From Podarcis bocagei (lineage: Eukaryota): a DNA stretch of 64,000 bases. The position numbers and the translations under genes were made by a program. Below, in pieces: positions 5,983 to 51,806 of this stretch (positions within the stretch are counted from its first letter, which is position 1; the number at the start of each line of letters is the position of its first letter). The notes under the pieces are model-generated. The model saw only the letters and a program-made list of their open reading frames with translations, searched no databases and was not told where the DNA came from. The stretch lies in NCBI GenBank assembly GCA_964188305.1, contig OZ076894.1; one strand, 5' to 3'.

Positions 5983-8519
5983 CTCTAGACCTTATCAAGA
6001 GTTCTAGTGGCTGAAAAATTTACTCACTATTTGGTGACATTTTGGTTGGTCCTAATAAAGATATTGCACAACTGTTGAGTTTGGAATCTACTACTAAGAC
6101 TTTTTCCCATTGAAATAGACTAAAAAAAACTAGGGGGGAAGATTTTTTTTTTTAATTGCATCTATCGTCTTCTTGTGCCTGAATCTGCATTAAAAAAAAA
6201 AAAAATTAGGTGCTGCTGTGGCATTAATTTGGAATCCTCCTTAATTCTGCTGAAGCAAACATTCATGCAAGAAGCAAATAGGGTACCTGGTAAAAGTATC
6301 CCCCTCCCCCAGCTTTAGCTCAAACACTCAGCTAAGAGTAATAGGCAAAATGCCTGCCTTAAGTGCAATGATCTGCTATTCACAGTTTGTACTTGAAGAA
6401 AGTTGCAATTAATTCACTGCAGCTGGTTATTGTTCAGGATAATTGCTATAGCAGAATAATACTTGGGAATCAAATGTCAGGGAGCTCACCACTTCTTTCT
6501 CCAGGAATGCAGTTTTCCATCTATGTTTTAAAATGGAAAAAATTCAAGATCATCAGGTGCTCATTGTAAACATGAAAAGCAACACTCAGTGTTGTTATGT
6601 TTGTTCTTCGTGGGATCAGCTCTGGTCTACGAACATTAGCCTGATGTGACAAAGGCTACTGATTTGGATAAAAATTGTTGTGGTAATTTAGATGTATAGA
6701 TTCAAATTCATCAGTGATTACTCTAATATAAACAGGAATGCAACACATATCACTATAGTGGGAAGGACTGTCCAGGTGATGTTTGCACCTGTCCAGGTGT
6801 TAATTTCAAGTGCCTCTGCTCTGCCTTGTTATGGTTCCAGATCTTTAAGCCAGCCATGGACTGAACAACTGCAAATGGAGGACTTCTTTAACTAGATGAC
6901 TCTCCTCTTAAAATAAAACGCATGCACACACCATGCACAGAACAGACTGTTTTAAGTCGGAGGGAAGTTCTGGTGCTACTTTGCAAGATTTTGAATAGGT
7001 ACATTAATAACTTGAGTTCTTTTCAACATAGCACTTTTTATGCTTCTACAAAGTAATAGTTTGACCCAATGTTCCTAGTTCCTTCCATTAGCAGATTTGT
7101 TCACTGCTGCAAAGGTTTCTTCTATACACTACTGTATTCTGAATTAACTAATGCATTAGCTTTCTAAATGCTCATGGATTCAAGGGCTAGAGAAGAAACT
7201 ATTGATAGATCTACCTTGTCCAAAGCTTTTATTTTTTCATCCAAGCACAATAAACATTTTAAATAAAGAAAAATCATTACAATGAAACGCTCCCCCAAGT
7301 ATCTTGTTGTGAAGCGATTTTTCAGCATGCAAAACATTCAACAGCATTCCTCAGCCTGCTTTTATTTAAAAGAACAACAGTGACATCTAGTGTGGATTGT
7401 AGTGTGGAATGACTGCTTAGGAAATGTTGATTGCTTTGGAGTCCCGCAATAAATCCTAGATCAGAAAACTTGCAAATCTTATGAACAGGAATATATTCAG
7501 GAATCGCAATGGCTGTGATCCTGCACACACTTTTGGACAGCAGAATCCTGCTCATCTAAAGGGGAACACCTTTTCATGAACAGAGCGAGCTATTAAAAGC
7601 TGTATGACAGGTAAAAATCAGCAGGTAAAGATGAAGCTTTAGTTATCATAATACGAAGAAAAAGCTCTCCTTTTATCAGTGGTAATATAGGGAAGCACTG
7701 TTCCAGGACTGTTTTTTGTGGGTAGGAGTGATGACATCATCAGTCAGAGCACCACTAAAATTTGCATACTCTCCGTTATCTGGACAAAATGAATTAGGTG
7801 ACAAAGAGACTTTCAAGATTGTGACAGATTAGCCTAGATGAAGTAAGAGAATTAGCAAAATACTCATGCAGAGGCTAAGTACTCATTTCCTTTGCTTTGA
7901 TTGGTGTTGCTATTTCACCGCAGCACTTTAAATGATAACACTTACTTGAAAACCTGTATGTTTCATTAGGATTTTTTTTATAAAAAAAACTGATGTGGAA
8001 ATGTGGAGAACTGAACCTAAGACTGCAACAAAAAGAGAAATTGAGGCGGCGGCGGTGGGGGGGGGAACGACCCAATCAGATAGATTTGCTCATCTCTAAT
8101 CATGACTAATTTCAGTCCATTTATTTCAATATGCCTACTCTGTGTGTGAGATAGCAGGATTACAACTGTATGCCGCTACAAGGGTTTCACTGATAAATAA
8201 GGATTCTTCCAAGCAAAGGAAAAATCCTACTGGTGGTAGGTTCATGCTTAACGATGCTGTCCCTTCTATTTTCCCACCATCCCCTTCCTGGTTCTTTTTC
8301 TTTGATTAAGAAGCATGAAAGCTCCTGAACTCAGTCCTTCTATTATTGTGTAACAAATAGATTTCAAAGGCTTATTACAGCCATGCCTTGACAATTCTTT
8401 CTAGTTCATAAGCATTCGTGCTGAGGAAAAAGGCCTAACAAACCCTGTGTTGTTTCTATTTAGCACTTGAGTTTTGCTTCATGCATCTAAGGAATTCATC
8501 AAAATATGGGGGAAAACAT

Positions 8520-12307: not shown

Positions 12308-12841
12308 CCGTATTTTTCGCCCCATAGGGCGCACTGGCCCATAGGGCGCACCTAGTTTTTTTTTGGGGGGGGGAATAAAGAAAAAAAATTATTTCCCCCC
12401 AGGAGTGGGGCTGGGGTGGGGGAAGCGCGCCAGTCTCCCCAGGCTTGCGGATATCTGCCTGACGGCTTCGGGATGCAGGCAACTCCGCAAACCAGGTCGG
12501 GGAATAGCGGGATGACGGCGCTCCACCTTCCCGCTGTCCCCTGAGCTTGTGGGGCTGCCCGATATCTGCACAAAGCCCAGGGCGCGCTGTGCGGCGCGCC
12601 TCAGGCTTCGGGATGCAGGCTGCTATCCTCAAGCCTTGGGAGCCCGAGGGGAACTCCTGCGGAGCTCCGAAGGCTTGCGGATAGCTTCCTGAAGCTTGGA
12701 GAGCGAGAGGGGTCGGTGCGCACCAACCCCTCTCACTCTCCAGGCTTCAGCGAAAGCCTGCATTCACCCCATAGGACGCAAACACATTTCCCCTTCATTT
12801 TTGGAGGGGAAAAGGTGCGTCCTATAGGGCGAAAAATACAG
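12308..12841. mobile_element. Tc1/mariner-superfamily MITE with CCGTATTT-type TIRs
   Basis: TIRs ccgtatttttcgccccatagggcgcac / gtgcgtcctatagggcgaaaaatacag; TA on the left flank; CpG-rich interior with repeated ggcttcgggatgcaggc. Confidence 0.85.
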
Positions 12842-13768
12842 TGATTAAAAGACTTGTATTATTAATTTTCAGGCATAAGCCATCCATTGCTGCTCGTGCA
12901 TGAGCTTCACTAAATGAATCAGGAACAGGCTGGAGGTGTACAGGATAGAATTCTATGGTCGCAACCTGGAAGGCTCCTATACTGTGAGTGCATAAAAAGA
13001 GCCCAGCTCAATCAGGCCAAAGGAAGCACACAAGGGGAGGGGAGAGTATGTAGGTCTGAGGGTTGCTCATGAAATGCCAAACCATGGTTTTTATATTGTT
13101 TGTGAATTAAAAATCGTTAACCTTAACCTATCTAATAAGTAGGATGCCTCTCTCACTCTTGTGCTTCCAAATTTGCATAAGCAGAATTCCTTATTTCCTA
13201 CTATTGGGATGAGGGACTGTTGGTCTGTGTTGTGACACTCACAGTATGCTTTCAAAGAATTGCCGTAGGAAACACACAAAAATTCTTAAGTGGATGACTT
13301 ATCAGGGCATTTAACACCAACAGATGTGAACCAGGCCTCGTTTTGTCATGAAATTTGGAACACATTATTAAGGATGCTCAGTGCTCGTGTCCACCAGAGA
13401 GTGGCCTCAGTTGTTTAGAAACCTCAGCTGAAGTCATTTTAACAGCTTGCATGAAACTTCTGGGGGATAAGTTTGATTAACTTAGTTTGGATGCAATGCT
13501 CACTACTTTTATTCTCAGTATGCCACTCCAAGATGCATTAGAGCTCCTTAATTTGTCTGGTGTTACCCCCACCCCACCTCAAACTGCTTTCAAGCATACC
13601 CACTGCTGAATCTATGGAGTGATTTAGCAAACATTTCATACTCCACCAGTCACTGCAGAAAAGTACATAAACATCAAGCCAACCAGGCCACTGGGAAATC
13701 ATCCAGTGCTGCCTGTTAGGGTAATCAAAACAGCCATGACATAAACACTTAGGTTGCGGGGATAGGTA

Positions 13769-18906: not shown

Positions 18907-19995
18907 TGACTCTGCTACCACTCAGTGGATTTGTAACTGGCTGACTGACCGAACCCAAAGGGTGCTCATCAATGGTTCCTCTTCATCCTGGAGAAGAGTG
19001 ACTAGTGGGGTGCCACAGGGTTCTGTCTTGGGCCCGGTCTTATTCAACATCTTTATCAACGACTTGGATGATGGACTCAAGGGCATCCTGATCAAATTTG
19101 CAGATGACACCAAACTGGGAGGGGTGGCTAACACCCCAGAGGACAGGATCACACTTCAAAACGACCTTGACAGATTAGAGAACTGGGCAAAAACAAACAA
19201 AATGAATTTTAACAGGGAGAAATGTAAAGTATTGCACTTGGGCAAAAAAAATGAGAGGCACAAATACAAGATGGGTGACACCTGGCTTGAGAGCAGTACA
19301 TGTGAAAAGGATCTAGGAGTCTTGGTTGACCACAAACTTGACATGAGCCAACAGTGTGACGCGGCAGCTAAAAAAGCCAATGCAATCCTGGGCTGCATCA
19401 ATAGGAGTATAGCATCTAGATCAAGGGAAGTAATAGTGCCACTGTATTCTGCTCTGGTCAGACCACACCTGGAGTACTGTGTCCAGTTCTGGGCACCACA
19501 ATTCAAGAAGGACACTGACAAACTGGAACGTGTCCAGAGGAGGGCAACCAAAATGGTCAAAGGCCTGGAAACGATGCCTTATGAGGAACGGCTAAGGGAG
19601 CTGGGCATGTTTAGCCTGGAGAAGAGGAGGTTAAGGGGTGATATGATAGCCATGTTCAAATATATAAAAGGATGTCACATAGAGGAGGGAGAAAGGTTGT
19701 TTTCTGCTGCTCCAGTGAAGCGGACACGGAGCAATGGATCCAAACTACAAGAAAGAAGATTCCACCTAAACATTAGGAAGAACTTCCTGACAGTAAGAGC
19801 TGTTCGACAGTGGAATTTGCTGCCAAGGAGTGTGGTGGAGTCTCCTACTTTGGAGGTCTTTAAGCAGAGGCTTGACAACCATATGTCAGGAGTGCTCTGA
19901 TGGTGTTTCCTGCTTGGCAGGGGGTTGGACTCGATGGCCCTTGTGGTCTCTTCCAACTCTATGATTCTATGATTCTATGATTCTATGATTCTATG
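18907..19995 (+). mobile_element. Young 5'-truncated CR1 LINE (RT domain and 3' end)
   Basis: Uninterrupted 312-aa ORF with [15 protein letters not shown] and [13 protein letters not shown]; ends in an (ATTCTATG)n tail. Confidence 0.97.
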
Positions 19996-47247: not shown

Positions 47248-47716
47248 CTGAAGAATACATAAGAATCAGGCTGAGCACATTTTCAAATTTTTCATTATTA
47301 ATACTGAAAAAACAAACCTACATTTCATTGTTTAGCAATGCCTGGAAGAGGTACAATAATATAAATTAAAACCAAAGGGTCTAAGCAAATAAACCGATAA
47401 CAAGAAGAGATAATACCACAGCAAAAACTGATTTTGGGGGGGTAAATAAGTAAGCTTTTGTAATTTAAAAAACACACACATACACACACAGCAATGTCCA
47501 TAGCAATAACAGTATCAAAGTCTGTTCAAGCCAATTAACCTCCAATTAAGACCTTACAAATAGCGGGGGAGAGATGGCAAGCAAAATGCGAGGGAGATAG
47601 TGAAAGATACAGGAAATTGAATGCAGATTTCCAAAAAATAGCAAGGAGAGACAAGAGGGCCTACTTAAACAAGCAATGCAAAGAAATAGAGGAAAACAAC
47701 AGAATGGGAAAAACAA

Positions 47717-48524
47717 AGCGTGTTCTCACTAAAGGAGAGCACGTGTTGCGGATGGGGACGGTCAAAGCACCCTGAAGTGAATGGGCAAGTGGAGATTAAG
47801 GAGCCTGACGTTGGAGCTGGCTGTTGCTGGGGCAAAACTGATGTTGCGATTTTAGGGGTGGGATCGGAGCTTATTTAAGCAGGGTCCACAGCAGGCTACT
47901 TTCTCTTTTGCTGTGGACATCGGATCTCCCGCCCGCCCTCCCTTTTTGGGCTTGCGCCTTGACCTTGCTTTGCCTGTCATGGGGTCGTTCGCATTGGTGC
48001 GGGGGCCTAGTAGGAATTTACCGACTGGCTGATTAGTGAGTGCCTTTCGGGTTTTGCCTACTACTTAGCAAATCGTCACAACTTGTAAGGTTGGCGGTTA
48101 GGCATTGGGTTAAATTGGTTGGTGGAGGGGTATGGATTGGCTGTGCCTACCCCTCCAATGCTGGCGCTGCACGGGAATTCCGTTAAAGGAATTCAGGGCC
48201 TTACCATCCTTTCGTCCAAACTCCTGGAATCGGGTTTGGGCCGTGTAAGGCCCCTAGGAGCATGCAGGGAGAAGCTGAGGGCCTGTGTCGCAGCTCCAGT
48301 TATCCCTGCACTTGTTCCTCCACACTGGCTTTCGCTGGAATCCGGAAGCCAGTGCTGTCCCCAAGGCGGGGGGGACAGCTAGTCATAACCAATGCCTAAG
48401 CAACCACTCACTATTTGTATGAAAATAAAGTTGTGGCCAAAATTTATGCCAAAAAACCTTAACCAAAAATTATGTGTGTTGTGTGAGTTATTGGGGTGAG
48501 GGTGTTTTGGAGGACCTCAGCACG
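47717..48524 (+). mobile_element. 808-bp non-coding insert, probably a solo terminal-repeat unit of a tyrosine-recombinase (DIRS/Ngaro-type) retroelement
   Basis: Precise insertion with caa on both sides; no TG..CA ends and no poly(A) tail; joined ends give CACGC-AAA-GCGTG; TATA-like 47872-47878; AATAAA 48424-48429. Confidence 0.6.
48089..48405 (+). ncRNA. Candidate highly structured RNA domain (multi-hairpin junction) inside the insert
   Basis: Closing stem ttaggcattgg / ccaatgcctaa (48098-48108 / 48389-48399) encloses six hairpins of 7-10 perfect bp; stem extensions rely on G-U pairs. Confidence 0.55.
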
Positions 48525-48949
48525 CAAGAGATCTGTTCAAGAAAATTGGAGATATAAAAGGAACATTTCGTACAAAGATTACCATAATAAAGGACAAAAG
48601 TGGAAAGGACCTAACAGAAGCAGAAGACATCAAGAATAGGTGGCAAGAATACACAGAGGAATTATACCAGAAAGATATGGATGTCTCGTACACCCCAGGT
48701 AGTGTGGTTGCTGACCTTGAGCCAGACATCCTGGAGAGTGAAGTCAAATGGGCCTTAGAAAGCACTGCAAATAACAAGGCCAGCGGAAGTGATGGTATTC
48801 CAGCTGAACTATTTAAAATTTTAAAAGATGATGCTGTTAAGGTGCTACACTCAATATGCCTTGAATAAGAATTCAGCCTTGTAAGAATTCAGCATTAAAT
48901 TGTTGGCCTTTATCCAGCCCATCCAGGGCCTGTGCACCCTTGGCTAATG

Positions 48950-49596: not shown

Positions 49597-50957
49597 TTTT
49601 TATTTATACCCCGCCCTCCCCAGCCAAGGCCGGGCTCAGAGCGGCTTACAAGCAATAATAAAAACAAGATGAGTGATTACAACTTAAAAACAAAAATAAA
49701 ATACAACATTAAAATAATGGAACATTAAAATATTAAAATGGAGCCTCATTGCAGGAGAAGGAAAAGAAAAAAGAAAAAGGGGGGCGGAGGGAATCAAATT
49801 GGCTCCAATCCAAAGGCCAGGCGGAACAACTCTGTCTTACAGGCCCTGCGGAAAGAGATCAGATCCTGCAGGGCCCTGGTCTCATGAGACAGAGTGTTCC
49901 ACCAAGTTGGGGCCAGTGCTGAAAAGGCCCTGGCTCTGGTTGAAGCCAATCTAACTTCCTTAGGGCCTGGGACCACTAGGGTGTTGTTATTTATGGACCT
50001 TGAGGCTCTCCGTGGGGCATACCAGGCGATGCGGTCCCGTAGGTACGAGGGTCCTAGGCCGTGAAGGGCTTTAAAGGTCAAAAGCAGCACCTTAAATCTG
50101 ACCCTGTACTCCACCGGGAGCCAGTGCAGCTTGAAAAGCACTGGATGAATATGCTCCCATGGCACAGACCCTGTGAGGAGCCTCGCTGCAGCATTCTGTA
50201 CCCGCTGGAGTTTCTGGGACAGCTTCAAGGGCAGTCCCGCGTAGAGCGAGTTACAGTAGTCAAGCCTGGAGATGACTGTCGCATGGATCACTGTGGCCAG
50301 GTCGGGGCGGGAAAGGTAAGGGACCAACTGCTTGATGCGGCGAAGGTGGAAAAATGTCGCCTTGGCTGTTGCTGTGACTTGTGCCTCCATGGAAAGGGAG
50401 GCGTCAAGGATTACACCCAAACTCTTAACGGAAGGCAATGGCACTAATTGGGCCCCCGCAAGAGAAGGGAGTTGGTCCCTCATCCCCATGCTATCCCGAC
50501 CTAGCCATAGGACCTCTGTCTTCGAAGGATTTAGTTTCAATCGGCTCCCACGAAACCATCCAGCCACAGCTTCCAAGCATCTGGTCAGTGTGTAAGGGGC
50601 CGAGTTGGTGTGGCCATCCATCAGTAGATAGAGCTGAGTGTCATCAGCATATTGATGACAGCCCAGCCCAAAGCTCCGGATAATCTGGGCAAGGGGGCGC
50701 ATAAAGATGTTAAAAAGCATTGGGGAGAGAATTGCGCCCTGCGGCACTCCACACACCAAGGAGTGGCGTGACGACATTTCCCTCCCTAGTGCCACCCTCT
50801 GTCCCCGACCAGAGATAAAAGAGCACAACCAGTTACGGGCTATGCCCTGTATCCCCACGTCTGCAAGGCGATGGTCCAGAAGATCATGATCGACCATGTC
50901 AAAGGCTGCTGACAAATCTAAAAGGATCAGCAGTCCTGACCCGCCTCGATCCAGTTG
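49548..50957 (-). mobile_element. Young 5'-truncated L2-clade LINE (RT domain and 3' end) with (ATT)n tail
   Basis: Uninterrupted ORF with LLDLSAAFDMVDH, GVPQGAILSP, YADDTQLY, SRLDYCNSL and LHWLP; (aat)n at 49548-49596. Confidence 0.96.
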
Positions 50958-51806
50958 TAAAAAATTAGAGTTTTGCAAGAGAACAATCATATTATCCAAC
51001 TAGATAAGAAGCACCTGACAGTACTTCAGGATCAGAATTTGGGAATCCTAGACCACTATGGCTAAAGAAAAAGAATATTGAGGTTCTCGCCTTTCCTTAA
51101 AGATTATGTACATACATTAGAGAACTACACCAATATGAAATGATTGAGTAGATCTTAAGCATTCATTATTCATTGTATGCTGCACAAAAGCATGCTTAAC
51201 TCTCCTGCATTTTTCTCTCCTGGAGGTAGAAAAACGGTTGCAGCAGGGGTGTTGCTAGGTTACAAGTCCCAGATCTTTTTGTGAGAGTCGTAAATGTTTT
51301 TGGGTGATGATTCCGGGGGAAATGGAACTGGGTGACTGGATAGAATATTCTTTTGGGTAAACAAATTAACAAATCGTTTAATATGGCTTTACCTAGAATT
51401 GATTTCAGAGTATTGAAGGAGTATTAATGAAGGGAAATTGAATTTATTTGGAGAAAAGTATGTTTAGAAATTAGGAGTAAATTAATAGAAGAGGAACTAA
51501 TTTGAGGGGTGATCTGGGGCGGCATGTAAACCAATTTAATAATTTATCTGGGGTGATTTGGAAATTAGTTGACTTGCTTTCTGTGACCTATAAATTCCAT
51601 TTGAAACTATACATAGACATAAGCATATGCAGTTTCTATGCAGGCTGGTGCCCCAAATATCTTAGGTTCCTAGCCAATATCCCAAAATTCCAGAAGGACA
51701 ATTAGAGCAGAAAAGCAGTTAAGAAGGGCAAGGATTCAGCAGAACCCACCCACTGTCATTCCTCTGCTCAAACTCACAGCTTCTCAAAGTAGCTTTTGGT
51801 AAAAAA

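What the first reader, a model, noticed from the sequence alone, without database searches (positions are those of the whole stretch)
48089..48405. Dense ~310-nt multi-hairpin RNA fold inside the putative DIRS/Ngaro unit
Seen: a closing stem ttaggcattgg / ccaatgcctaa (48098-48108 / 48389-48399, extended by ggttg / caacc) encloses six hairpins, most of them nearly back to back. They are tggaggggta/tacccctcca (48123-48157), gaattcc/ggaattc (48175-48194), gggccttac/gtaaggccc with inner gtccaaactc/gggtttgggc (48196-48253), aggagca-tgcaggga/tccctgca-tgttcct with inner agctg/cagct (48256-48319), cactggctttcg/cggaagccagtg (48323-48354) and ctgtcccc/ggggacag (48355-48378). A further stem tagtagg/cctacta lies at 48008-48063. 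The stems are unrelated in sequence, so this is not a simple palindrome or tandem repeat. The imperfect positions I checked are G-U on the + strand, pointing to selection on a + strand single-stranded molecule. The domain ends about 20 nt before AATAAA. I do not recognise it as a known RNA family. Inferred: a possibly undescribed cis-acting RNA for packaging, priming, export or 3'-end protection, or a ribozyme, in a tyrosine-recombinase retroelement.
Basis: partly seen in the sequence, partly recalled or inferred. Interest (0 to 1): 0.82.

Follow-up and report, generated by a model that had tools for sequence, protein, structure and literature searches.

The report
Conserved folded RNA in lizard retroelement repeat
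A jumping-gene end-piece about 800 letters long in a wall lizard genome carries a 310-letter stretch that folds into six hairpins; a second, very different copy keeps the same shape, so the shape was selected, probably to control the 3' end of the element's RNA.

Summary
48089-48405 folds into a closing stem around six hairpins (-158.5 kcal/mol, z -6.6), and the fold survives when the whole unit is folded. No Rfam family matches.

The fold lies in an 808-bp unit (47717-48524) inserted into a BovB LINE, in a TLL1-like intron of a Podarcis genome. The unit has CAA on both sides, no TG...CA ends, a TATA-like box and AATAAA plus a GT-rich block.

I found one second full copy, in P. raffonei (L010). 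It is only 49-55% identical inside the fold, yet it folds by itself (z -5.6) into the same helices: 101 of its 105 pairs lie within 3 columns of a window pair. Randomly placed substitutions give 10.5 +/- 8.9 (0 of 160 come close).

New here: an invariant 10-bp outer helix (48075-84 / 48428-37) overlaps the last two A of AAUAAA.

Best reading: a selected, sense-strand, cis-acting RNA domain in the 3' part of an LTR-like solo unit. The unit is probably a solo AB repeat of a Ngaro-type tyrosine-recombinase retroelement. The domain probably governs 3'-end formation and protein recognition.

Ngaro membership and function are not shown. The scan had already noted a similar fold elsewhere in this genome (s1-335468).

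The parts
47714..47716 (+). CAA on the left side of the unit (BovB target letters)
   Evidence: BovB copies without the insertion join 47714 to 48527 in contigs of three other species and in RNA reads (table 5). The target reads aaaaC[C/A]Agagatc, so CAA stands once in the target and on both sides of the unit.
47717..48524 (+). 808-bp LTR-like unit, probably a solo AB repeat of a tyrosine-recombinase retroelement; ends AGCGTG...CAGCACG
   Evidence: It interrupts the BovB ORF2 reading ...NRMGKTK | RDLFKKIGDIKG. A 746-nt contig of another species starts to match at 47715 with a different upstream sequence (table 8, record 11). A second full-length copy, L010:6135-6914(-), matches with nhmmer E 5e-49.
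47718..47744 (+). hairpin at the 5' end of the unit
   Evidence: -14.6 kcal/mol on +, -8.4 on -. In L010: 7 pairs the same, 1 pair changed on both sides (T-A to C-G), 2 broken. The first ~35 nt have high depth in contigs, followed by a hypervariable stretch (table 2).
47872..47878 (+). TATA-like box (tatttaa)
   Evidence: L010 has tatataa at the same alignment columns, inside a region only 41-54% identical. This is a motif match only; no transcription start was mapped.
47884..47918 (+). hairpin just after the TATA-like box
   Evidence: 10-bp perfect stem, z -4.3. In L010, in a structure-blind alignment: 4 pairs changed on both sides and kept, 1 changed on one side, 2 the same, 3 broken.
48008..48063 (+). 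stem 48008-14/48057-63 upstream of the domain
   Evidence: z -2.25 alone. In L010: 5 pairs the same, 2 changed on both sides (A-T to G-C, T-A to C-G), 0 broken.
48075..48084 (+). 5' strand of the outer helix P0 (GUCACAACUU)
   Evidence: Complementary to 48428-37. All 10 pairs are identical in L010. Pair probability is 0.62 in the window copy and 0.95 in L010. It lies in the most conserved block of the unit (48049-93, 87% identity).
48089..48405 (+). the multi-hairpin domain: closing stem P1 plus hairpins H1-H6
   Evidence: The homologous stretch L010:6247-6535(-) folds to -142.6 kcal/mol, z -5.6. 101 of its 105 pairs lie within 3 columns of window pairs, against 10.5 +/- 8.9 under randomly placed substitutions.
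48224..48231 (+). loop CUGGAAUC of the inner hairpin of H3; the same 8 letters form the loop of H5 at 48335-42
   Evidence: the motif occurs 3 times in the 64 kb, and two of these are the two loops. L010 keeps CUGG in the H5 loop.
48424..48429 (+). AATAAA poly(A) hexamer
   Evidence: It lies in a block that is 81% identical between the copies (48400-46), with AATAAAGTTGTGGCCAAAATT identical. RNA read depth falls after about 48440 (table 2; weak).
48428..48437 (+). 3' strand of the outer helix P0 (AAGUUGUGGC); overlaps the last two A of the hexamer
48473..48489 (+). GT-rich block at the usual distance behind a cleavage site
   Evidence: Read from the sequence. Motif only.
48525..48527 (+). CAA on the right side of the unit; BovB resumes here
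   Evidence: table 5.

Best explanation
48089-48405 is the core of a selected, sense-strand RNA structure in the 3' part of an 808-bp LTR-like unit of a lacertid retroelement. With the outer helix 48075-84/48428-37 the structure spans about 360 nt. The unit carries its own TATA-like box and poly(A) signal. It is flanked by one trinucleotide (CAA) on each side and lacks TG...CA ends. It is therefore most likely a solo AB repeat of a Ngaro-type tyrosine-recombinase retrotransposon, and the fold lies in the B part, which is the 3' UTR of the element's RNA.

Proposed mechanism (inferred). As the RNA is made, six hairpins form inside a long closing stem. The outermost helix pairs a conserved block upstream with the last two A of AAUAAA and the next eight bases. 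This places the poly(A) signal at the foot of the domain, where folding can mask it. That would let part of the transcripts read through the internal copy of the repeat, as split-repeat elements need. The hairpins, two of which share the loop CUGGAAUC, would offer a platform at the RNA 3' end for the element's own proteins (packaging or start of reverse transcription).

Shown: the fold, its conservation across two copies, the unit's borders and signals, and the outer helix. Inferred: the retroelement class, and every functional step.
For: Fold is real and robust.

Selection on the fold: the second copy L010 is 49% identical inside the domain (55% over aligned columns), against 87% and 81% in the two flanking blocks. 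It nevertheless folds on its own to -142.6 kcal/mol (z -5.6), with the helices in the same order and place. I made 160 control sequences with the same substitutions and gaps placed at random. They gave MFE -105.2 +/- 5.5 (best -124.1) and 10.5 +/- 8.9 pairs near the window's (max 38), against 101 observed. A helix-by-helix comparison gives 64 pairs the same, 10 changed on one side and 18 changed on both sides (fitted, so descriptive only). Compensatory pairs in a structure-blind alignment: 2 in stem 48008-63, 4 in the post-TATA hairpin, 2 in the closing stem.

Sense strand: 11 G-U pairs against 4. Both copies are 10-17 kcal/mol more stable in sense. All 8 transitions listed in paired positions among family contigs of three species keep pairing on the + strand, and 7 of them would give A.C on the - strand.

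Unit and class: empty BovB sites and CAA flanks; both copies share the same ends, and CGTG...CACG changes to CATG...CATG together; conserved TATA-like box and AATAAA block. [quoted passage not shown] Solo AB repeats of Ngaro are described (PMC8547959).

Outer helix over AAUAAA.
Against: No reverse transcriptase or recombinase gene lies beside either copy.

No B-to-A junction ('goes back' joint) appeared among contigs of three species (table 5).

One abundant contig puts 560 nt of other repeated sequence in front of the unit's start. That fits an internal-region-to-LTR junction better than B1-A2 (record 11).

The L010 flanks are TAA and CCA, not a clean CAA pair.

Only two full sequences exist. 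RNAalifold's count of 17 compensatory pairs is not above its null (13.1 +/- 2.6).

One-sided changes between the two copies show no strand bias (9 G-U type against 8 A.C type), and shuffle z-scores are equal on both strands.

The outer helix is invariant, so it has no covariation support.

RNA reads over the unit are few, in both directions, and come mostly from other copies. The start site, the poly(A) site and every function are untested.
Confidence: 0.5

Rival explanations
1. The unit is a solo LTR of an ordinary integrase-type LTR retrotransposon or endogenous retrovirus. The fold lies in a very long R region (about 550 nt), comparable to TAR/poly(A) hairpins or the HTLV Rex-responsive element.
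For: The TATA-like box and AATAAA plus GT-rich block are in one orientation, with a hypervariable U3-like stretch between them. A contig places repeated non-unit sequence directly before the unit's start, as an internal region would sit before a 3' LTR (record 11). No B-to-A junction was seen.
Against: The BovB flanks fix the ends at AGCGTG...CAGCACG. TG and CA sit 4 and 2 nt inside the ends in both copies. Only 3 nt are shared at the flanks, not a 4-6 bp duplication. A U3 of 185 nt with an R of 550 nt would be unusual.
Confidence: 0.15
2. The hairpins act at the DNA level. They would fold in the single-stranded cDNA intermediate, or as cruciforms or protein sites used during circle formation or recombination, and not in the RNA.
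For: DIRS-1 amplifies through linear single-stranded cDNA (PMC7192593). Shuffle z-scores are the same on both strands. One-sided changes between the two copies show no strand bias. The conserved hairpin at the very 5' end lies upstream of the TATA-like box.
Against: The sense strand is favoured by G-U content and by energy in both copies. 8 of 8 listed family transitions keep sense-strand pairing. First-strand cDNA is the antisense strand. Six unrelated hairpins are not what recombinase sites look like.
Confidence: 0.1
3. The unit is the 3' tail of a LINE- or SINE-like element copied by target-primed reverse transcription, 5'-truncated here, and the fold is the tail that its reverse transcriptase recognises.
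For: Contig depth rises from the 5' part to the 3' part of the unit (table 2). Short microhomology at the junction would fit. Structured 3' tails are known for stringent LINEs (own knowledge).
Against: Two copies from different lineages begin and end at the same places. The first 35 nt are themselves abundant and conserved. There is no A-tail or microsatellite tail. About 95 nt of the element follow the AATAAA hexamer, i.e. it runs on well past the presumed cleavage site.
Confidence: 0.04
4. The fold is a self-cleaving ribozyme, or a by-product of palindromic sequence with no function.
For: Only the density of hairpins, and the fact that some retroelements carry ribozymes (own knowledge).
Against: No ribozyme family matches, even at E<=10. 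The no-function reading is contradicted by the second copy, which keeps the fold at about 50% identity.
Confidence: 0.04

Closest known systems
Solo AB repeats of Ngaro retrotransposons (A1-[ORFs]-B1A2B2; DIRS order)
   Same: An isolated LTR-like unit with no coding region. It is flanked by a short identical trinucleotide instead of a 4-6 bp duplication and has no TG...CA ends. Solo AB repeats are described in Cafeteria (PMC8547959). [quoted passage not shown]
   Different: No A|B border, no B1A2 junction and no recombinase gene were seen here. At 808 bp the unit is long (Xenopus Ngaro: A 236 + B 152 bp, PMC9210276). A full-text search for 'Ngaro' together with 'RNA secondary structure' found no paper.
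HIV-1 poly(A) hairpin and HTLV-1 Rex-responsive element (structured R regions of retroviral LTRs; own knowledge)
   Same: A stable RNA structure inside a terminal repeat that contains or abuts the AAUAAA hexamer, in an element that must ignore one copy of its poly(A) signal and use another.
   Different: No sequence or Rfam similarity. Here a 310-nt six-hairpin domain lies upstream of the hexamer, and only the outer helix touches it. The unit's ends are not those of an integrase-type LTR.
3' UTR stem-loops of stringent LINEs and the hairpin noted at the 3' end of DIRS-1 RNA
   Same: A structure at the 3' end of a retroelement RNA, where first-strand synthesis must begin. For DIRS elements the primer is unknown, and a 3' hairpin has been proposed (PMC7192593).
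   Different: Those are single short hairpins at the very end of the RNA. This is a large multi-branched domain ending about 40-45 nt before the presumed cleavage site. No priming evidence exists here.
   Same: Same genome, same size class (the L010 homologue is 289 nt), same position at the tail of the element RNA, and no Rfam match.
   Different: I could not read that sequence, and the look-up by sequence was blank. Whether it is the same family is not established.

Membership tests
Ngaro / DIRS-order tyrosine-recombinase retrotransposon (terminal repeat) | Reverse transcriptase/RNase H and tyrosine recombinase genes between the repeats | tested here: inconclusive
   Both copies found are solo units. 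No Ngaro-like ORF turned up in the ~250 kb of locus DNA fetched plus the 64-kb window. Full-length elements could not be reached with the tools.
Ngaro / DIRS-order tyrosine-recombinase retrotransposon (terminal repeat) | Split direct repeats A1...B1A2B2, i.e. a B-to-A junction somewhere in the genome | tested here: inconclusive
   No 'goes back' joint appeared among contigs of three species (table 5). These are short contigs from low-coverage runs, and only one reads call was allowed.
Ngaro / DIRS-order tyrosine-recombinase retrotransposon (terminal repeat) | No target-site duplication beyond a trinucleotide shared by the element junction and the target | tested here: inconclusive
   Window copy: CAA on both sides, and a single CAA-like site in empty BovB copies. 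L010 copy: TAA and CCA, each one change away from CAA. A true 3-bp duplication cannot be told apart from a shared core.
Ngaro / DIRS-order tyrosine-recombinase retrotransposon (terminal repeat) | Isolated AB units occur beside full elements | tested here: met
   Two of two copies are isolated units. The phenomenon is described in PMC8547959.
Integrase-type LTR (solo LTR) | Ends 5'-TG...CA-3' flush with the flanks | tested here: not met
   The ends are AGCGTG...CAGCACG in the window and ATCATG...AACATG in L010. TG and CA lie inside the ends.
Integrase-type LTR (solo LTR) | 4-6 bp target-site duplication | tested here: not met
   Only CAA (3 nt) is shared at the flanks of the window copy.
Integrase-type LTR (solo LTR) | Promoter and poly(A) signal in one orientation (U3-R-U5 logic) | tested here: met
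   The TATA-like box and the AATAAA block are conserved in both copies. These are motifs only.
Any Rfam family (including hammerhead, HDV-like, twister and retroviral cis elements) | Covariance-model match | tested here: not met
   0 matches at E<=1 on 12 kb. Only five chance-level matches, far below their gathering scores, at E<=10 on 841 nt.
LINE/SINE tail (target-primed reverse transcription) | Variable 5' truncation, A-rich or microsatellite 3' end, longer variable duplications | tested here: not met
   Both copies have the same 5' and 3' ends and no tail.

The most novel reading that the evidence does not exclude
The domain with its outer helix is a structural gate on the poly(A) signal. 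It would make tyrosine-recombinase retroelements read through the internal copy of their repeat, and its hairpins would be the entry site where their reverse transcriptase starts. That would be the missing primer or initiation signal of DIRS-order elements, a class for which no cis-acting RNA is known.
Probability: 0.15. Interest if true: 0.75.

Novelty: new member of a known kind. Interest (0 to 1): 0.55.

Why it matters
How tyrosine-recombinase retrotransposons (DIRS, Ngaro, PAT) start reverse transcription, and how they make an RNA that spans their split repeats, is not known (PMC7192593). My full-text search for 'Ngaro' with 'RNA secondary structure' found no paper.

This finding offers a large fold that is kept while its sequence drifts to about 50% identity. 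It sits directly on the poly(A) signal of an abundant LTR-like unit. That gives a concrete, testable candidate for both steps, and a new RNA family for annotation of squamate genomes.

If the unit turns out to be an ordinary LTR, it is still a new structured R-region element. The locus itself is a dead solo copy in an intron and has no evident effect on the host gene.

Tried and rejected
Searches for more copies that found nothing:
- The 87-aa ORF across the fold has no protein relatives and no Pfam match, so I treat it as spurious.
- No other copy in the window.
- Exact-pattern scans with conserved 20-23-mers found nothing in viral contigs, metagenome contigs or bacterial/archaeal genomes.
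- Look-ups in earlier findings by sequence and by relatives were blank.

Random sampling of Podarcis DNA. I used two LINE RT ORFs of the window only as bait. All 12 look-ups yielded about 230 kb of non-overlapping DNA and one copy (L010).

Rejected hit. A weak nhmmer hit in L006 does not fold (z -0.1).

Search for Ngaro genes. Pfam on unexplained ORFs of the loci found none.

Statistics that did not discriminate:
- RNAalifold's 17 compensatory pairs against a null of 13.1 +/- 2.6.
- The window's pairs judged in L010 on a structure-blind alignment: 63 of 100 paired against 54.7 +/- 5.0, P 0.06.
- One-sided changes between the two copies: 9 G-U type against 8 A.C type.
- Shuffle z-scores equal on both strands.

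Methods that failed. My own structure-string alignment performed badly and was dropped. A first sliding-window script timed out.

Limits. Both read tools are capped at one call, so the 154 unlisted variants and the 739 unlisted loose ends could not be examined.

Full report
**1. The observation**

As RNA, the + strand folds to -158.5 kcal/mol, into a closing stem (48089-93/48401-05 and 48098-108/48389-99) around six hairpins. One hundred dinucleotide shuffles average -121.2 +/- 5.6 (z -6.6). The - strand folds to -141.9 (z -6.8). The same domain forms when the whole 808-nt unit is folded.

Among 532 windows of 317 nt across the 64 kb, corrected for GC, it ranks 4th on the + strand and is outside the top ten on the - strand. 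Each hairpin is individually significant, and all nine tested are more stable in the + sense. The + fold has 114 pairs with 11 G-U; the - fold has 101 pairs with 4 G-U. Rfam gives nothing at E<=1 on 12 kb, and only chance-level matches at E<=10 on the unit. The strand claim is plausible but not settled by energy alone, because z-scores are equal on the two strands.

**2. Where it sits**

The window is an intron of a tolloid-like gene on the - strand (CUB and EGF exon ORFs). The genome is Podarcis: a CR1 ORF of the window is 99% identical to a P. muralis protein.

A BovB LINE ORF2 is interrupted between ...NRMGKTK (to 47716) and RDLFKKIGDIKG (from 48528). Contigs of three other species, and RNA reads, join 47714 to 48527 directly. 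These are BovB copies without the insertion (table 5). The target reads aaaaC[C/A]Agagatc, and the filled site reads aaaaCAA | AGCGTG...CAGCACG | CAAgagatc. So the inserted unit is 47717-48524 (808 bp) with CAA on both sides. This agrees with an earlier first-reader note on 'units bounded by a CAA core' (s1-345278), which prompted me to read the junction this way.

The unit has:
- a hairpin at its 5' end (47718-44);
- a TATA-like box (47872-78);
- a 10-bp hairpin right after it (47884-918);
- AATAAA (48424-29);
- a GT-rich block (48473-89).

It does not start with TG or end with CA.

**3. Abundance**

Low-coverage runs of four coded organisms hold parts of the unit. Contig depth over its conserved parts is of the order of the flanking BovB. 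The stretch 47752-47877 and the middle of the fold are poorly covered, with many skips, as expected for hypervariable parts. A 746-nt contig of another species matches 47715-47900 with one mismatch and continues upstream into other, repeated sequence (record 11). This confirms the left border. It also shows an arrangement that I cannot explain by B1-A2.

In about 290 kb of Podarcis DNA that I could read, there are two full units. That suggests very roughly ten thousand copies per genome.

**4. A second copy**

Direct routes to other copies failed (see Tried and rejected). I therefore sampled random Podarcis loci, through annotated LINE proteins related to two ORFs of the window.

One locus, L010 (P. 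raffonei), holds a full-length copy on its minus strand at about 6135-6914 (nhmmer E 5e-49). It is again a solo unit with no coding sequence beside it. It begins and ends at the same places as the window copy. The end motifs differ together: CGTG...CACG becomes CATG...CATG. Its flanks are TAA and CCA.

Identity along the unit is uneven:

| Segment | Identity |
|---|---|
| 5' end | 66% |
| U3-like stretch (47761-47870) | 41% |
| Block before the fold (48049-93) | 87% |
| Inside the fold | 49% |
| Block with AATAAA (48400-46) | 81% |

The TATA-like box and AATAAAGTTGTGGCCAAAATT are kept.

**5. Is the fold kept?**

The homologous 289 nt of L010 fold on their own to -142.6 kcal/mol (z -5.6). The antisense strand gives -132.0. 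On a structure-blind MAFFT alignment, 101 of its 105 pairs lie within three columns of a pair of the window's fold. The helices correspond one to one: closing stem and H1-H6. Only a weak 5-bp helix of the window is missing, and it falls in a 13-nt deletion.

As a null model, I kept the alignment, the gaps, and the exact number and kinds of substitutions, but placed them at random among columns with the same window letter. 160 such sequences fold to -105.2 +/- 5.5 (best -124.1) and share 10.5 +/- 8.9 near pairs (max 38). The substitutions between the two lineages have therefore spared, or compensated for, the structure.

Comparing helix by helix gives 64 stacked pairs the same, 10 changed on one side and 18 changed on both sides. 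This count is fitted to each copy's own fold, so it is descriptive only.

In the blind alignment, both-sided changes that keep pairing occur in:
- the stem 48008-63 (2);
- the post-TATA hairpin (4);
- the 5' hairpin (1);
- the closing stem (2).

Weaker tests were not significant. RNAalifold's 17 compensatory pairs compare with 13.1 +/- 2.6 under the null. The window's pairs read in L010 on the blind alignment give 63 of 100 paired, against 54.7 +/- 5.0.

**6. Which strand?**

For sense:
- G-U counts and energies favour sense in both copies.
- Among the family variants listed by the reads tool, all 8 transitions in paired positions keep pairing on the + strand (A-U to G-U or C-G to U-G), and 7 of them would give A.C on the - strand. 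This is from a partial list: 154 differences were not shown.
- The orientation matches the TATA-like box and AATAAA.

Neutral:
- One-sided changes between the two copies split 9 G-U type against 8 A.C type.
- z-scores are equal on the two strands.

I take sense RNA as likely, at about 0.75.

**7. A new feature**

The two most conserved blocks flank the fold and are complementary over 10 nt: GUCACAACUU (48075-84) with AAGUUGUGGC (48428-37). This helix is identical in both copies. Its pair probability is 0.62 in the window copy and 0.95 in L010, and enforcing it costs 0.2 kcal/mol or nothing. It overlaps the last two A of AAUAAA and the eight bases behind it. The poly(A) signal therefore sits at the foot of the domain. 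Because both strands are invariant, there is conservation but no covariation for this helix.

Two hairpins (the inner hairpin of H3, and H5) have the same 8-nt loop, CUGGAAUC. The motif occurs only three times in the 64 kb.

**8. What it is**

An LTR-like unit with its own promoter-like and poly(A) signals, trinucleotide flanks and no TG...CA ends fits the solo AB repeats of Ngaro elements (PMC8547959). It also fits the trinucleotide rule of DIRS-order integration (PMC3266345, PMC7192593).

Earlier notes of this scan report Ngaro elements in this genome, and a roughly 290-nt multi-stem fold in a Ngaro B repeat 1.95 Mb away (s1-335468). I could not compare the sequences.

Against membership: no recombinase or RT gene lies nearby, no B-to-A junction was seen, one contig has other repeated sequence in front of the unit, and the L010 flanks are unclean. 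I put Ngaro-type at about 0.55, an integrase-type LTR at 0.15, and the remainder on other or unknown classes. In every case the fold lies in the transcribed terminal repeat, just before the poly(A) signal.

**9. How it most likely works**

All of this is inferred. Split-repeat elements need an RNA that passes the poly(A) signal of the internal B copy. A helix that hides the hexamer once the domain has folded would allow that. This is comparable in logic to the HIV-1 poly(A) hairpin (own knowledge).

The size of the domain, its six maintained hairpins and the repeated loop suggest protein binding at the RNA 3' end, for packaging or for starting reverse transcription. The primer for that step is unknown in this class of elements (PMC7192593). 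I give 3'-end control about 0.3, a protein platform for packaging or priming about 0.3 (the two are not exclusive), a DNA-level role 0.1, and a ribozyme under 0.05.

**10. Novelty and verdict**

This is a new RNA structure family of a known general kind: cis-acting folds in retroelement terminal repeats. It is not in Rfam, and my search of the literature on these elements found no description. The scan has noted a similar fold before, on other DNA of this genome.

The copy in this window is a dead solo unit. The interest lies in the family. Interest 0.55.

Noticed in passing
window 12481-12917: The most stable 317-nt folds of the whole window, on both strands (residual z -6.2 and -6.8). The region is GC-rich with repeated palindromic motifs such as caggcttcgggatgcagg. 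It looks like a foldback or inverted-repeat element.
   Followed up: partly
window 47553-47670: RNA reads of run X23 cover this BovB piece at 200-360x in one direction only. About 250 and 210 reads run off at 47552 and 47670 into the same foreign sequences. A BovB fragment of this kind is probably an exon of a well-expressed transcript elsewhere in the genome.
   Followed up: no
protein cluster of P0208: Short 'hypothetical proteins' filed under Streptomyces olivaceus and Mycobacteroides chelonae (contigs of 491-618 nt) cluster at 90% identity or more with Podarcis CR1 reverse transcriptase. This is most likely lizard DNA contaminating bacterial assemblies.
   Followed up: no
window 49797-50999 (-) and 18962-19897 (+): An open 401-aa L2-type reverse transcriptase ORF (90% identical to P. 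muralis proteins) and a 312-aa CR1 reverse transcriptase ORF (99%). Both LINE families look young in this genome.
   Followed up: partly
window 47757-47897: Contigs of three species skip or replace 65-123 nt here (table 5). The U3-like part of the unit is hypervariable between subfamilies, while the first 35 nt and the TATA-like box are kept.
   Followed up: partly
window 48220-48323 and 48373: Loose ends of contigs and of 11 RNA reads show subfamilies in which the middle hairpins (H3 inner and H4) are replaced by other sequence. In these, H6 keeps its stem CUGUCC/GGACAG with a different loop. One abundant contig of organism C shortens H5 on both arms.
   Followed up: partly
L006 7949-8096 (-): A weak profile hit to the middle of the unit (E 0.009) that does not fold (z -0.1). 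It is either a very old fragment or chance.
   Followed up: yes
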